A DNA stretch of 64,000 bases from Auanema rhodensis. Its lineage: Eukaryota > Animalia > Nematoda. The stretch is taken from assembly GCA_964057225.1 (NCBI GenBank), contig OZ059900.1:10912001-10976000 (forward strand). The letters run 5' to 3'. The notes beneath the pieces were generated by a model. It saw only the letters and a list, made by a program, of their open reading frames with translations. It was not told where the DNA came from and did not search any database. The position numbers and the translations under genes were made by a program. Shown here in pieces: positions 4,984 to 59,615 of this stretch (position 1 is the stretch's first letter; each line of letters begins with the position of its first letter).

Positions 4984-7900
4984 ATGAGTTTTTTTGAATT
5001 GAATATAACTCAAAGCATACAAAAAGGATGGGCCAGATATATTATCCACAGGTTTCGACTTTATTGTTTTTAATCTTAAAGAAAACAAATATTTCTTTCA
5101 GATACTTGGGGCAATATCTTCAGCAAAATTTATCACTTGACCAGATGGATTTAACATCCAGCTCTGTTAAACTGTCAACCCTTAACTTAAATGTAGAATA
5201 TGTGAACGAAAAATTAAGAGGAATGAATATTCCTTTAACGTTGGTTGATGGATATATTGGCGAAATTGTTTTAGGTTATCTTTATTGGGTTATCAATTAT
5301 ATCACACCACGTTTTCTAAGATATACCATGGACTTCATTATCTTCACAGTCCAGTAAGCTGAAAGTATCTGATCTAGAGCTAACATTTCAAGCAAGTGAA
5401 GATTTTGCAAAGGACGAGCTGTGTATTGAAAATAAATTTGCATTTTATAATTTATTTGTGTTCATTGCAGTATCATCAATGTTTGAAGGCATGGCAGATA
5501 GCATGGTGACGCCTGAGGATATAGCAAAGGACTACTATGAAAGCTCTGACACCGATGTTGATGTGAACGGTATTAACAATTTTAAAAAAGTAATTTACGT
5601 TAAAAGATGTGATCTGAAAAGTTAAACATTGAAGGTTATTGATACTATAGTTTCTCGTTTTTGCATGGACGTTGAGAACATTACTATTCGATTAGAAGTC
5701 CAATCTAAAGCTGGTCTGTATCTCACAACCGCTATTGAGTTAAGAATTGCAAAGTACAATTTATCATTTTTTGACACTAAATGTTTCTTAAATTAATTTC
5801 AGAGCCCAATTCATGGATGAACAGTTGAAAAACATGGAAAAAGACACAGATACAACGCACATCACGAACGATTTAGTGAATGCTGTTAAGTGCGTGCAGT
5901 TCACAGGTTTACAAGCATATATATACATAGATTACTTAATTTGTGTTTTAGACATTGAGGTATTTACTGATTTCTTCTACGAATTAGAAGGCGAGCATGA
6001 AGAAAAAAATCTAAAAAGAGAGAAACAAAAACAAAGTTCTATACTTACTGACTCCAACTTCACTTCATGCTATGCTTCTGGTAAGTTTGACGAATTAAAA
6101 TTTTTAAATGATTTTATTTTAGTTAGTGAGATGCCAAAAAATATGGAAAAGAATGAGGCTATTAGGTATTTCACTTTCACTTAAAATAGACTACTGTTCG
6201 AAATGATTTTTTCCTAGTATTTCCTCGCAGCCTGTAAAAATTTTACGCATTCCGCGCACTACGGAGGTTTTCCTCCGTTTTCAGAGTTCGTCTAGTCAGG
6301 TATATTTAGTTAGAGATGAGATCAATGACTAGTTGGTGAAATTAAGATTAAAGTTAACATAAATTGCACGACAGTACAAATGTTCTGTGTTCCATCTCAG
6401 ATTGAGATAATCAAGAGGTTGAGTTATTGTATTTTTGAATTATTCGTCTACTTACCTATTTTTAAGCGTTTTTCATTCGTGGATGTTTAGTAAAAATAAG
6501 CAAAACTACTCTGACACCTCGCAGCGCCGAATCGAGGACAATGAATATGAAAAAGTTGTGGGCACATTAGAACAACTAGACACAGACATGTCTCAAGCCA
6601 GAGGTATTTTTAAATTAAATAAAGTTTGCTTTTCTAAATACTAAGAAGGACTCTGGCGAGAAAAAGAAGTTTTCCAACCATTCACTGAGATTCATCTAGA
6701 AACTTCAGACAGCTTTACCGAAAATAACTACTCAGAGCGAGAAAACATCAGTGATTCACGTATAATGTTTTTTAAAACTATGCTTCATGAAAGTTTGCAG
6801 ATAAAGTTGACAGTTCTAGTGATACAAGCGTTCAAATTGACATTGGTTCGCTTGTATGTTGTTTTCCACTTGAAGACCCTTTACATGCTCTAAACCCCGC
6901 AACAGCTGATAATAGTATTAAGATTCTAATGGAAATTGCTGAAGAGTATTTGCTTTCACTTCAATTTTAAATAATTTTTTTTAAACAGATTTTTTCAACA
7001 AATAAATGAAATTCACAAAGATGAAAAAACTCCTTTGCAATTTGAACACATCAAGTAAGTTTTCTCAAAAGTTATTTGCTTTATCATTGCTTTTAGATGT
7101 ATCACTGCTTTGAGATTTTTTTATGATACTAAACGGAATGAAAAATTCTCTCAAGAAAAGATAAAAGTGGTAATGAATGACGTTGCCACTACTGAATACA
7201 TTAAAAAAGATGGGATTATTTCTCCAATAGATATTATTCGATTCACTCGTTCTGAAGGAAATTCTCGTCCAGACATTGAAATTCGATATTCTTCAGTTAT
7301 GAAAGGAGAAGTACAAAACTTGACAAGTGAATGCGCACATTTTTAGTTTTCAGCAATTGTGCGAAATAACTTTAAATGATTTGAGAACAAACCTGGACAT
7401 AACCATTTTAAACCGACTGAAAGATTTTGTGTACCCTACCACGGTCTTCAATGCGGCTAATAAGGTTAATGTATATCGTAGTCGAAGTTTTAATAAGTTA
7501 GTTGCCTGGTTTTCACAATTTAATCAACAATTTGTTTAAGCATGAGTGCATTTCCACTGAGACTTGAAGAAGAAACAGTTCACAGTAATTTGAGAGTTTT
7601 GATATCTTGTGAAAACATGATTATGGATTTGAAGTGAGTTTTCGTTTTTTTTCAAATAATGAATATACTGTTGAAGAGTCCCCAAAGCTGATTTAAGTTC
7701 AAAAAAGGTTACTAACTCTATGATACACGATGAATATCTGAAATTGGATATAAACGGTTTACAAATAGATATAGGATCTAATGAAAATGAAATCGAAATA
7801 AGCACAACATTTAATTCTTTCAAAGGTATAGTTAAACGAGTTTTTTCAATAATATTGTAATTAGGCGACTTCATTTACAAGATTGAATCAGGAAAAATAA

Positions 7901-58130: not shown

Positions 58131-59615
58131 ATGGATAAGTGATTTTTAATATATTTTTCGCTAAGTAGCTTGTTTCTTTCAGAGTTCCAGATTTGATTAA
58201 CAAATCACAAAACAAGGATAAAATTCATTTACGTATATTGAACTACGATGACGAAATCAAAAATATAAACGATGATGTAGAATGCTTATAATTTTGAGAA
58301 ATTGTTATTGAAAATTTTGAGGCTGTCGAAACTTCTCATCGACTACTTTTACTCTGTGATGAAGCAAAGGAAAGAGGCATGGAAACCTTAGCAGCCTTAG
58401 AGGATCAGGATGGTAAGACTCACGTTACAAAAAAAACCATATGTTTTGACGTAAGAATATAACAGAAACCAAAGTGAAAGTTTGCAGAGCAATTGGACAA
58501 TATTGAGAATACAATGTATAAAATTTCAAGTGATATGGTGCGGGTCCGACGTGATATAAAAAAAGCTAATGAATGCTTGTGTTATCCCTTATGTGGTTCC
58601 ATTAGGTTTGAGAAAGAAATATTGTTAAAAAGTGTAATTGGTATTTTTCAAAAAGAAAAAAATAAATTTAACTTAAGGAATGAAAAATATTATAATTACG
58701 AAGATAAAACATTTTATCTGACTGAATTTCTTCTTCAGAGTTATCGTTTCTTTAACTTCAAAAGTATTATTCTTATTGTCAACTGTTTGATATTTTTTTC
58801 CTAAAAATTTTCGTGATCTCTTTGAAATTTCTCTTTTTTCTCTCTTGTTCTCTTACAGGAAAATTGCAAACTCAAACCTGAAAAACTTTTAAAATTGCTG
58901 AATGTCTTATAAAATTTCAAACTGTTTACTTATAAATTAGATTTCTCACAAAACAGATACAAATCTGCTTGTCTCATTATACGTGAGTAGTTCTCATTGC
59001 AAACAAATGAATATAGCCTTTATATTGAATTCCTGATCGTTAAATAATATGCAGATTCTTTATTAAACTTTACAGTTGGCTCTGGAAAAAAATAGTAGAA
59101 CAGTGTACGTGTACTGTGAAGGAGCAAGAAAACATCAGCCACATATCGTAGGATGATGTGAAATGCACTTTCCACCTTTCATGAAAATTTTCAGTTCTTC
59201 CGAGCAGGGGATACGCCATTCTTATTACTCAAAAACAACTACAAATAAAACATTACTCAGGTTTCTTATTTTACTATCACTAGTCAAAACGGTTTCATTA
59301 TCAGTTGAAAAAAATGATATTCTTGTTGTATATAATATTTTTAAATTTAATGCTTTAGAGCTTCAAATGATAATACGATAGAGCAAGAAATAGAGCGTAA
59401 CACGGTGCAGTTAGAAACTGCTTTAGATTCAATGAAATGCATGGCTTTGGATATCGATGTACAACTCCGAATTCAAGAGCCAAAAGTTAATCGGATACAC
59501 ATGATGGTGATAAAAATTATCATAATTTGTAATATTAGTTTCATGATGTTATCAGGTTGAAAATAACGATATCAGCATGAATGAAGCACATCAGAGGATT
59601 AAGAAAATACCTTGA
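58131..59615 (+). CDS. aex-4: SNAP-25-family Qbc SNARE, AEX-4-like
   Basis: Qb AVETSHRLLLLCDEAKERGMETLAALEDQDEQLDNIE, a Cys-rich linker (CLCYPLC), and Qc IEQEIERNTVQLETALDSMKCMALDIDVQLRIQEPKVNRI. The VQLxxQEPKxNRI motif recalls C. elegans AEX-4. Confidence 0.75.

What the first reader, a model, noticed from the sequence alone, without database searches (positions are those of the whole stretch)
4984..59615. Relaxed splicing code: tiny introns with frequent AAG acceptors and weak pyrimidine tracts
Seen: keeping conserved proteins in frame requires very many introns of mostly 40-50 nt (about 45-50 in atg-2 alone). More than 20 of them end in AAG, e.g. 5275-5320 (ttctaag), 12518-12562 (gtttaag), 45112-45152 (gtagct...aacaaacgattaag, with essentially no pyrimidine tract) and 52960-53002, plus several in the MAM, CCDC22, unc-6 and ShK genes. 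TAG is also common; TTTCAG is a minority. Established: C. elegans acceptors follow a strong TTTCAG consensus read by U2AF (UAF-1/UAF-2), and AAG is uncommon in animals. Inference: this lineage may define introns mainly by length and AT content plus AG with a T near -5, using a U2AF35 or second-step machinery largely indifferent to the -3 base. This is my best candidate for an undescribed system in the window.
Basis: partly seen in the sequence, partly recalled or inferred. Interest (0 to 1): 0.78.

Follow-up and report, generated by a model that had tools for sequence, protein, structure and literature searches.

The report
Frequent AAG intron ends, Auanema-like worm
In this small roundworm genome, about one in five of the tiny 40-50-base introns (29% in the atg-2 gene) ends in AAG instead of the CAG that the model worm almost always uses; this is a loosened form of ordinary splicing shared with a related Auanema species, not a new system.

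Summary
Aligning Auanema sp. JU1783 ATG2 to window 4984-12847 gives 49 GT-AG introns (median 45 nt). The base at -3 is A 14, C 15, T 20, G 0. Forty-three of the 49 introns, including 12 of the 14 AAG ones, fall on the same residue and phase as introns of the Auanema gene. The protein alignment is gapless at 12-13 AAG junctions. AAG sites in the PLD3-like gene and (more weakly) CCDC22 are also supported. Window-wide, ab initio models give about 19% AAG (32 of 166), against 0-10% in atg-2 of four other rhabditids and 15% in Auanema JU1783.

A short T tract at -6..-4 (82/78/67% T) is kept. G at -3 is still avoided and C is still 2.6-fold enriched. AAG sites look like YAG sites in tract, length and +1 base. 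T tract plus distance from the donor picks the true acceptor in 43 of 47 introns, with or without -3. So this is a relaxed -3 position in a nematode-type acceptor. No change in a splicing factor is shown.

The scan had already noted this pattern on other windows of this genome (e.g. s1-401504).

The parts
4984..12847 (+). atg-2 gene: 50 exons, 49 GT-AG introns, 1848 aa, no internal stop
   Evidence: Spliced alignment of Auanema ATG2 (P0002) to the window. 43 of 49 introns share residue and phase with the Auanema gene.
5275..5320 (+). AAG intron, 46 nt (TTTCTAAG)
   Evidence: Same position as an Auanema intron. Gapless GEIVL|DIPWTSL in 9 nematode ATG2 sequences. The downstream frame is closed by TAA just before the AG.
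5590..5634 (+). AAG intron, 45 nt (CATTGAAG)
   Evidence: Conserved position. Gapless NFKK|VIDTIVSRFC.
6300..6346 (+). AAG intron, 47 nt (AAATTAAG)
   Evidence: Conserved position, phase 0. Gapless against P0002.
6418..6466 (+). AAG intron, 49 nt (TTTTTAAG)
   Evidence: Conserved position. The Auanema orthologous intron is also AAG.
6604..6645 (+). AAG intron, 42 nt (ATACTAAG)
   Evidence: Position within 1 residue of an Auanema intron. The in-frame alternative 3 nt downstream is also AAG.
7487..7569 (+). Possible AAG intron, 83 nt, uncertain
   Evidence: No matching Auanema intron and a poorly aligned region. Many alternative pairs exist.
7634..7676 (+). AAG intron, 43 nt (TGTTGAAG)
   Evidence: Conserved position. 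Gapless MIMDL|KVPKADL.
8695..8734 (+). AAG intron, 40 nt (TGTTTAAG)
   Evidence: Position within 1 residue of an Auanema intron that is also AAG.
9451..9493 (+). AAG intron, 43 nt (TTTTTAAG)
   Evidence: Conserved position. Gapless ESIYGL|SLNFGF.
10119..10160 (+). AAG intron, 42 nt (CTTTTAAG)
   Evidence: No Auanema intron at this position, but the alignment is gapless (VSD|RITKAIVEQP) and read-through hits a stop.
10257..10298 (+). AAG intron, 42 nt (ATATCAAG)
   Evidence: Conserved position and gapless against P0002. The intron is in frame and has no stop, so it rests on homology alone.
10580..10624 (+). AAG intron, 45 nt (TTTTAAAG)
   Evidence: Conserved position. Gapless NPFI|RFCLNNISVQ.
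10859..10901 (+). AAG intron, 43 nt (TTTTGAAG)
   Evidence: Conserved position. The Auanema orthologous intron is also AAG. Gapless IDLKK|ITFSCNIY.
12518..12562 (+). AAG intron, 45 nt (AGTTTAAG)
   Evidence: Conserved position. Gapless AYKLMAE|GVRQTKEDY. The nearest in-frame alternative acceptor (12556) is also AAG.
52960..53002 (+). AAG intron, 43 nt (TTTTTAAG), in the PLD3-like gene
   Evidence: The flanking exons align to human PLD3 chain 8q1k_A up to residue 155 and from residue 156, and to PLD4 the same way. The only other frame-keeping pair is GAG and removes 9 residues.
53363..53401 (+). AAG intron in the PLD3-like gene, 39 nt (TTTTTAAG); the alternative acceptor at 53413 (TTTTCAAG) is also AAG
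   Evidence: Spacing against PLD3 favours the 39-nt form. Both candidate acceptors are AAG.
45112..45152 (+). AAG intron, 41 nt (CGATTAAG), in the CCDC22 gene (44779-46846)
   Evidence: Pfam CCDC22_N hits lie on both flanking exons. The profile score rises from 12.8 to 18.1 bits with the exon run to 45111, while the rival 35-nt TAG intron adds nothing. Support is moderate.
32458..32500 (+). AAG intron, 43 nt (TAATTAAG), in the gene with a weak MAM-domain match
   Evidence: It is the only GT-AG pair of 34-80 nt that keeps both exon frames. Read-through hits a stop.
37277..37319 (-). AAG intron, 43 nt (TTATTAAG)
   Evidence: Both frame-keeping pairs end in AAG. The intron shifts the frame and read-through hits a stop.
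46088..46273 (+). Two ab initio AAG introns in CCDC22: 46088-46128 and 46231-46273
   Evidence: Ab initio model. Both shift the frame. A TAG alternative exists for the second.
25292..25331 (+). Ab initio AAG intron, 40 nt (AATTAAAG)
   Evidence: It shifts the frame and read-through hits a stop. The alternatives end in AAG or GAG only.
30724..31239 (+). Netrin (unc-6-like) C-terminal region with ab initio AAG introns 30724-30772 and 31197-31239
   Evidence: Both are needed for the frame. The ab initio netrin model is unreliable elsewhere, so support is weak.
53924..53976 (+). Probable GAG intron, 53 nt (AATTTGAG), in the PLD3-like gene
   Evidence: Spacing against PLD3 fits to within 1 residue. 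It shows that G at -3 is rare but not excluded.

Best explanation
These are real U2-type GT-AG introns of a rhabditid nematode in or near the genus Auanema. The usual nematode acceptor motif UUUUCAG/R has degenerated to roughly U-U-U-H-A-G/R, where H is A, C or T.

Shown here: the acceptor is marked by a short U tract at -6..-4 directly next to the AG. The AG lies at a narrowly fixed distance (39-54 nt) from the 5' splice site. The -3 base adds no discriminating information. A at -3 occurs at about its background frequency, C is still favoured, and G is still avoided.

Inferred: U2AF-type recognition is kept (large subunit on the U tract, small subunit on AG/R). In such tiny introns there is usually no well-placed competing AG with a U tract. 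The known lower intrinsic efficiency of AAG (CAG > UAG > AAG > GAG) would then cost little, selection for C at -3 would be weak, and the base would drift among A, C and T. The trait is old and shared with Auanema sp. JU1783.
For: Gene structure by homology: 49 introns in atg-2, with -3 = A 14, C 15, T 20, G 0. Of these, 43 of 49 (and 12 of 14 AAG) lie at the same residue and phase as introns of the annotated Auanema sp. JU1783 atg-2. The alignment is gapless in conserved blocks at the AAG junctions.

Other genes: PLD3-like 52960-53002 is confirmed by PDB numbering, and CCDC22 45112-45152 is favoured by the Pfam profile.

AAG sites carry the same signal as YAG sites. T at -5 is found in 12 of 14 (p=8e-4 against 41% background). 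They have the same T-tract strength, length and +1 purine frequency.

Retained motif: T at -6/-5/-4 is 82/78/67%. G at -3 is 0 of 49 (p=0.003). C at -3 is 31% against 12% background (p=4e-4).

Prediction: T tract plus length picks the true site in 43 of 47 introns, with or without -3.

Gradient among orthologous atg-2 genes, AAG count and information at -3: C. brenneri 0 of 16 (1.84 bits), P. mayeri 0 of 56 (1.86), C. bovis 2 of 20 (0.75), Cylicocyclus 5 of 53 (0.58), Auanema 7 of 46 (0.83), window 14 of 49 (0.31). Window against the four non-Auanema species: p=2.5e-5.

The -3 base is uncorrelated at 43 orthologous introns between the window and Auanema (chi-square p=0.61), as expected if it drifts freely.

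Published background: very-short-intron lineages tend to have degenerate splice signals (PMC2483917). C. elegans uses UUUUCAG/R bound by U2AF (PMC4889670, PMC4484395). The efficiency order is CAG > UAG > AAG > GAG (PMC11802449).
Against: There is no RNA evidence. Every junction therefore rests on homology and frame logic.

The Auanema gene model is itself an annotation. Only one window and one large gene were anchored by homology. Outside atg-2 the ab initio models have about 15% false introns, and one was shown to be false.

That U2AF is unchanged is an inference. C. brenneri introns have the same AT composition as the window's yet 81% C at -3. C. bovis has equally tiny introns but only 10% AAG. 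So neither composition nor intron length alone explains the shift, which leaves room for a change in a trans-acting factor.
Confidence: 0.72

Rival explanations
1. Altered trans factor. The small U2AF subunit (UAF-2) or a second-step factor of this clade has lost its preference at -3. AAG, and more rarely GAG or non-AG ends, would then be accepted as well as CAG, and the sequence pattern would follow from that change.
For: Information at -3 is 0.31 bit against about 1.85 bits in C. brenneri and P. mayeri, although intron composition equals that of C. brenneri. C. bovis has equally short introns but keeps 50% C and only 10% A. A probable GAG acceptor exists at 53924-53976. Earlier unchecked notes of this scan report non-AG acceptors in the same genome. 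Donor sites are unusual too: T at +3 in 39-52% of introns in the window and in Auanema.
Against: No splicing-factor gene could be examined. C is still enriched 2.6-fold and G depleted at -3, so some preference remains. The trait is graded across rhabditids and does not look like a switch.
Confidence: 0.2
2. Pure composition effect. AT-biased mutation in a 31% GC genome replaces C at -3 by T or A, with no change in selection or machinery.
For: A at -3 (29%) does not differ from the intron background of 35% (p=0.37). TAG is the commonest acceptor. The window is 29-35% GC.
Against: C. brenneri atg-2 introns have the same interior composition (A .34, C .14, G .11, T .40) but 81% C and 0% A at -3. 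Composition alone therefore does not give this pattern.
Confidence: 0.1
3. Miscalled borders. The true acceptors are nearby CAG or TAG sites, and the AAG calls are artefacts of reading frames by eye or by an aligner.
For: Frame-keeping alternative GT-AG pairs exist for many introns. One ab initio AAG intron (2815-2855) is false, and 32764-32807 is ambiguous with a TAG intron.
Against: For 12 atg-2 AAG introns, the nearest YAG alternative with the same donor would delete at least 7 residues or leave an intron of only 33 nt, in blocks that are gapless across 9 nematodes. The AAG positions coincide with Auanema introns. AAG sites carry the T tract (12 of 14 have T at -5). PLD3 numbering is contiguous across 52960-53002.
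Confidence: 0.04

Closest known systems
[quoted passage not shown] 2005, as cited in PMC4889670 and PMC4484395)
   Same: A short U tract lies directly next to the AG, with T at -5 and -6 the most conserved positions. A purine is preferred at +1 (74%). There is no branch-point consensus. Introns are short.
   Different: C at -3 falls from 'almost exclusively C' to 31%. A rises to 20-29%. TTTCAG is only 18% of sites. T at -5 is 78%, not near-invariant.
Degenerate splice signals in lineages with very short introns (Irimia and Roy 2008, PMC2483917)
   Same: The intron length range is minimal and narrow (39-54 nt). Both the 5' site (+5 G only 33%, +3 T 39%) and the 3' site are weak, and there is no branch motif.
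   Different: That paper's examples are protists, a nucleomorph and dicyemids. Here the case is a rhabditid nematode close to species with a very strong acceptor motif, and a U tract is still kept.
Germline-preferred proximal 3' splice sites of C. elegans that lack a pyrimidine tract, a few without AG (Ragle et al. 2015, PMC4484395)
   Same: It is a nematode precedent for 3' sites that depart from the U2AF consensus.
   Different: Those are alternative, tissue-specific sites 6-18 nt upstream of a consensus site. Here the AAG sites are the only plausible, constitutive sites, and they keep the U tract.
Efficiency order CAG > UAG > AAG > GAG, and U2AF1 S34 mutations that shift the -3 preference in humans (PMC11802449, PMC6911043)
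   Same: The same rank order shows up as enrichment over background: C is enriched, T and A are near neutral, and G is depleted.
   Different: The gap between U and A at -3 has nearly vanished here. No factor mutation is known for this lineage.

Membership tests
U2-type GT-AG spliceosomal introns | GT at the 5' end and AG at the 3' end | tested here: met
   A complete, stop-free 1848-aa ATG2 is obtained with 49 GT-AG introns only. The aligner required GT-AG. Allowing other ends only overfitted.
U2-type GT-AG spliceosomal introns | Removal from mRNA at these exact junctions | not testable with these tools
No cDNA-derived protein of this species was found.
Nematode UUUUCAG/R acceptor (U2AF site) | U tract at -7..-4 next to the AG, with U at -5 most conserved | tested here: met
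   T at -6/-5/-4 is 82/78/67% against a 41% background. This is weaker than in Caenorhabditis (95-100% at -5).
Nematode UUUUCAG/R acceptor (U2AF site) | C at -3 in the great majority of introns | tested here: not met
   C is 31%, T 41%, A 29% and G 0% in atg-2, and C is 36% window-wide. In C. brenneri and P. mayeri atg-2, C is 81-91%.
Nematode UUUUCAG/R acceptor (U2AF site) | Purine at +1 | tested here: met
   A plus G make up 74% at +1 in atg-2. AAG and YAG sites do not differ.
Nematode UUUUCAG/R acceptor (U2AF site) | Direct binding by UAF-1/UAF-2 | not testable with these tools
   This needs biochemistry or the factor genes, and neither is in the window.
Very-short-intron lineages with degenerate signals | Narrow minimal length, weak 5' and 3' consensus, and no branch motif | tested here: met
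   Lengths are 39-54 nt for 44 of 49 introns. The donor has G at +5 in 33% and T at +3 in 39%. YTRAY is not enriched (16 of 47 against 16.3 expected).
AG-scanning (first AG after the branch point) model | An AG exclusion zone between the branch point and the 3' splice site | tested here: not met
   AG is depleted only in the last 5 nt. At 6-20 nt upstream its frequency is 0.021-0.032 against 0.034 expected.

The most novel reading that the evidence does not exclude
The Auanema clade has a real change in how the intron's 3' end is read. For example, a UAF-2 zinc-finger change, or U2AF35-independent recognition in roughly 45-nt introns, could remove discrimination at -3. Together with the GAG acceptor seen here and the non-AG acceptors noted elsewhere in this genome, this would mean the 3' end is set mainly by the U tract and by distance. 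Such a lineage would be a natural genetic handle on what sets -3 and AG specificity in animals.
Probability: 0.2. Interest if true: 0.7.

Novelty: new variant of a known kind. Interest (0 to 1): 0.4.

Why it matters
C. elegans is the textbook case of an unusually strict 3' splice-site motif read directly by U2AF. Here is a fairly close relative in which the hallmark C at -3 has become almost uninformative, and one intron in four or five ends in AAG. That gives a natural comparison for asking which residues of U2AF35 or of second-step factors set the -3 preference, and how far tiny introns can rely on distance plus a 3-nt U tract.

There is also a practical point. Gene finders trained on C. elegans-like acceptors will misplace or miss a sizeable share of introns in this clade. 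Any annotation of these genomes should allow AAG, and rarely GAG.

Tried and rejected
I searched for cDNA-derived or annotated ATG2 of this species with Auanema ATG2 as the query, whole and residues 1-420. Neither search found any protein of this species.

Ab initio gene finding with my own dynamic program. The first versions over- or under-predicted. The tuned version reaches about 85% precision on atg-2, so I used it only for window-wide statistics. One of its AAG introns (2815-2855) proved to be nuclear-receptor zinc-finger coding sequence. This also showed that my cross-check of window models against the Auanema locus can copy such an error. I therefore did not count those matches as proof.

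Letting the aligner use seven acceptor dinucleotides and GC donors only overfitted, even displacing perfect TTTTTCAG sites. I rejected that run as uninformative.

PDB searches for the CCDC22 exons found nothing.

A branch-point motif (YTRAY) and an AG exclusion zone were looked for and not found.

Compensation at AAG sites by a stronger U tract, a +1 purine or a particular length was not found.

No paper describing this trait in Auanema or other nematodes turned up.

Exons were searched one by one by reference.
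Full report
**What the window is.** The 64-kb window is AT-rich (29-35% GC). It carries nematode genes broken into many short exons. Pfam hits on single exons identify:
- a nuclear receptor
- an intermediate filament protein
- netrin (Laminin_N)
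- sideroflexin
- a P450
- a PLD3-like phospholipase-D-family protein
- CCDC22 (44779-46846, +)
- a Meis/PKNOX homeobox gene

The MAM and ShK matches are only weak. A conserved C-terminal atg-2 exon (12179-12334) found ATG2 proteins in the representative library. The best match was P0002 (94% identity over the exon), which is 'unnamed protein product [Auanema sp. JU1783]'. Its genomic locus (L001) has the same gene order as window 2370-19843: nuclear receptor, ATG2, an unknown gene on the other strand, Meis/PKNOX, Filament. Whole-protein identity is 47%. The window therefore comes from a related species in or near Auanema, not from JU1783 itself.

**No RNA evidence was possible.** Two word searches for cDNA-derived or annotated ATG2 of this species found none. 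All junctions below rest on homology, conserved intron positions and reading-frame logic. Exons were searched one by one by reference.

**atg-2 structure.** I wrote a protein-to-genome spliced aligner that requires GT..AG, handles all three phases and has no preference at -3.
- On Auanema's own locus it reproduces P0002: 1854 of 1880 codons are identical. It finds 46 introns of 38-59 nt, 7 of them AAG.
- On window 4900-12950 it gives 49 introns (39-89 nt, median 45) and a stop-free 1848-aa protein from the ATG at 4984 to the TGA at 12845-12847.
- The -3 base is A 14, C 15, T 20, G 0.
- The aligner knows nothing about Auanema's introns. Even so, 43 of the 49 window introns fall on the same residue (4 of them within 1-2 residues) and the same phase as Auanema introns. 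This includes 12 of the 14 AAG introns.
- In a MAFFT alignment with eight nematode ATG2 proteins, the AAG junctions lie in gapless, often strongly conserved blocks. Examples are GEIVL|DIPWTSL, NFKK|VIDTIVSRFC, MIMDL|KVPKADL, NPFI|RFCLNNISVQ, IDLKK|ITFSCNIY and AYKLMAE|GVRQTKEDY.
- With the same donor, the nearest CAG or TAG alternative would delete at least 7 residues or leave a 33-nt intron.
- Only 7487-7569 (83 nt) is doubtful.

**Other genes.**
PLD4 behaves the same way.
- *PLD3-like, next AAG intron.* It is more likely 53363-53401 than 53363-53413, judged by spacing against PLD3. Both acceptors are AAG.
- *CCDC22, 45112-45152 (cited as lacking a pyrimidine tract).* The CCDC22_N profile score rises from 12.8 to 18.1 bits when the upstream exon runs to 45111. 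The rival 35-nt TAG intron (45087-45121) adds nothing. This site still has TT at -5/-4.
- *Window-wide.* A tuned ab initio model (about 85% precision on atg-2) gives 166 short introns with A 32, C 59, G 4, T 71, or 19% AAG.
- *Outside atg-2.* About 13 AAG introns are needed to keep the frame or remove a stop. For several, every feasible GT-AG pair ends in AAG.
- *Errors and ambiguities.* One ab initio AAG 'intron' (2815-2855) is really zinc-finger coding sequence. 32764-32807 is ambiguous with a TAG intron.

**Is it unusual? Orthologous atg-2 genes.** I fetched the atg-2 loci of four annotated rhabditids and aligned each protein to its own locus.

| Species | Introns | A / C / G / T at -3 | Information at -3 (bits) |
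|---|---|---|---|
| C. brenneri | 16 | 0 / 13 / 0 / 3 | 1.84 |
| Pristionchus mayeri | 56 | 0 / 51 / 1 / 4 | 1.86 |
| C. bovis | 20 | 2 / 10 / 0 / 8 | 0.75 |
| Cylicocyclus nassatus | 53 | 5 / 25 / 0 / 23 | 0.58 |
| Auanema sp. JU1783 | 46 | 7 / 27 / 0 / 12 | 0.83 |
| this window | 49 | 14 / 15 / 0 / 20 | 0.31 |

The window differs from the four non-Auanema species (Fisher p=2.5e-5) but not clearly from Auanema (p=0.14). Two comparisons matter here. C. brenneri introns have the same base composition as the window's. C. bovis introns are just as short. Neither AT content nor intron length alone therefore explains the shift.

**What still defines the site.**
- T is kept at -6/-5/-4 (82/78/67% against 41% background). 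The pyrimidine share over -20..-4 (0.59) is the same as in the relatives. The tract is therefore the normal short nematode tract, not a weakened one.
- G at -3 is absent in atg-2 (p=0.003). C is 2.6-fold enriched (p=4e-4). A is at its background level (p=0.37).
- AAG sites do not differ from YAG sites in T tract, intron length (43 against 44.5 nt) or +1 purine. Twelve of 14 have T at -5 (p=8e-4).
- There is no AG exclusion zone beyond the last 5 nt and no YTRAY branch motif.
- In a leave-one-out test, a matrix over -8..-4 and +1 plus a length term picks the homology-defined acceptor in 43 of 47 introns, with or without the -3 column. Length alone gets 35 and the matrix alone gets 37.
- At 43 orthologous introns, the -3 base of the window and of Auanema is uncorrelated: 15 are the same against 14.3 expected, chi-square p=0.61. 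The base turns over freely among A, C and T.

**Reading.** It is not a new system. The acceptor is still a nematode-type U-tract-plus-AG/R site, the change is one of degree, and it is shared with Auanema JU1783 and foreshadowed in other rhabditids.

The most likely mechanism, which is inferred, is ordinary U2AF-type recognition in about 45-nt introns. There, U tract plus distance leave no competing site. The known lower efficiency of AAG (CAG > UAG > AAG > GAG; PMC11802449) would then cost little, and selection for C would be weak. This fits the published pattern that very-short-intron lineages have degenerate signals (PMC2483917). It contrasts with the strict C. elegans UUUUCAG/R site (PMC4889670, PMC4484395).

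A real change in UAF-2 or a second-step factor stays open, at about 0.2. The Caenorhabditis comparisons argue that something beyond composition and length changed, but no factor gene could be examined.

**Earlier notes of this scan.** The same pattern was flagged on many other windows of this genome. One follow-up (s1-401504) concluded that about one tiny intron in five ends in AAG and that this is loosened ordinary splicing. My independent figures for this window (19% overall, 29% in atg-2) agree. I found no paper describing the trait.

Noticed in passing
window 53924-53976 (+); also 44829-44869 (+): There are probable GAG acceptors. For the PLD3-like intron (AATTTGAG), spacing against human PLD3 fits to within one residue. 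For the first CCDC22 intron, every frame-keeping GT-AG pair ends in GAG. G at -3 is therefore rare (about 2%) but not excluded. Another note of this scan covers this same stretch.
   Followed up: partly
window atg-2 introns; L001:10001-17651: The donor sites are unusual too. T at +3 (GTT...) is found in 39% of window introns and 52% of Auanema JU1783 introns, against 0-11% in Caenorhabditis, Pristionchus and Cylicocyclus atg-2. G at +5 is only 33% in the window, against 55-80% elsewhere.
   Followed up: partly
window 60227-63251: A tandem array of a 148-bp unit, 20.4 copies at 98% identity, lies next to the gene-rich part. A 2026 preprint reports that Auanema rhodense eliminates large tandem-repeat blocks from somatic cells. 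Whether this array or this species is involved was not tested.
   Followed up: no
window 2370-19843 versus L001 (Auanema sp. JU1783, CALQYR020007273.1): Gene order and strands are conserved over five genes (nuclear receptor, atg-2, an unknown gene, Meis/PKNOX, intermediate filament), although ATG2 protein identity is only 47%.
   Followed up: partly
window 44779-46846 (+) and 54496-57165 (-): The CCDC22 gene is the plus-strand gene at 44779-46846 (Pfam CCDC22_N and CCDC22_CC). The coiled-coil gene on the minus strand at 54496-57165 gave no Pfam match and remains unidentified.
   Followed up: partly
window 1-1660 (+): An open frame at the left edge resembles a retroelement pol fragment (MPGKAPSFKITYRIP...). 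This is my reading of the translation and was not checked.
   Followed up: no
window 22354-24153 (+): A 600-codon uninterrupted open frame, very long for this genome, lies beside an LDL-receptor-class-A-like cysteine motif (my reading). It has no Pfam hit.
   Followed up: no
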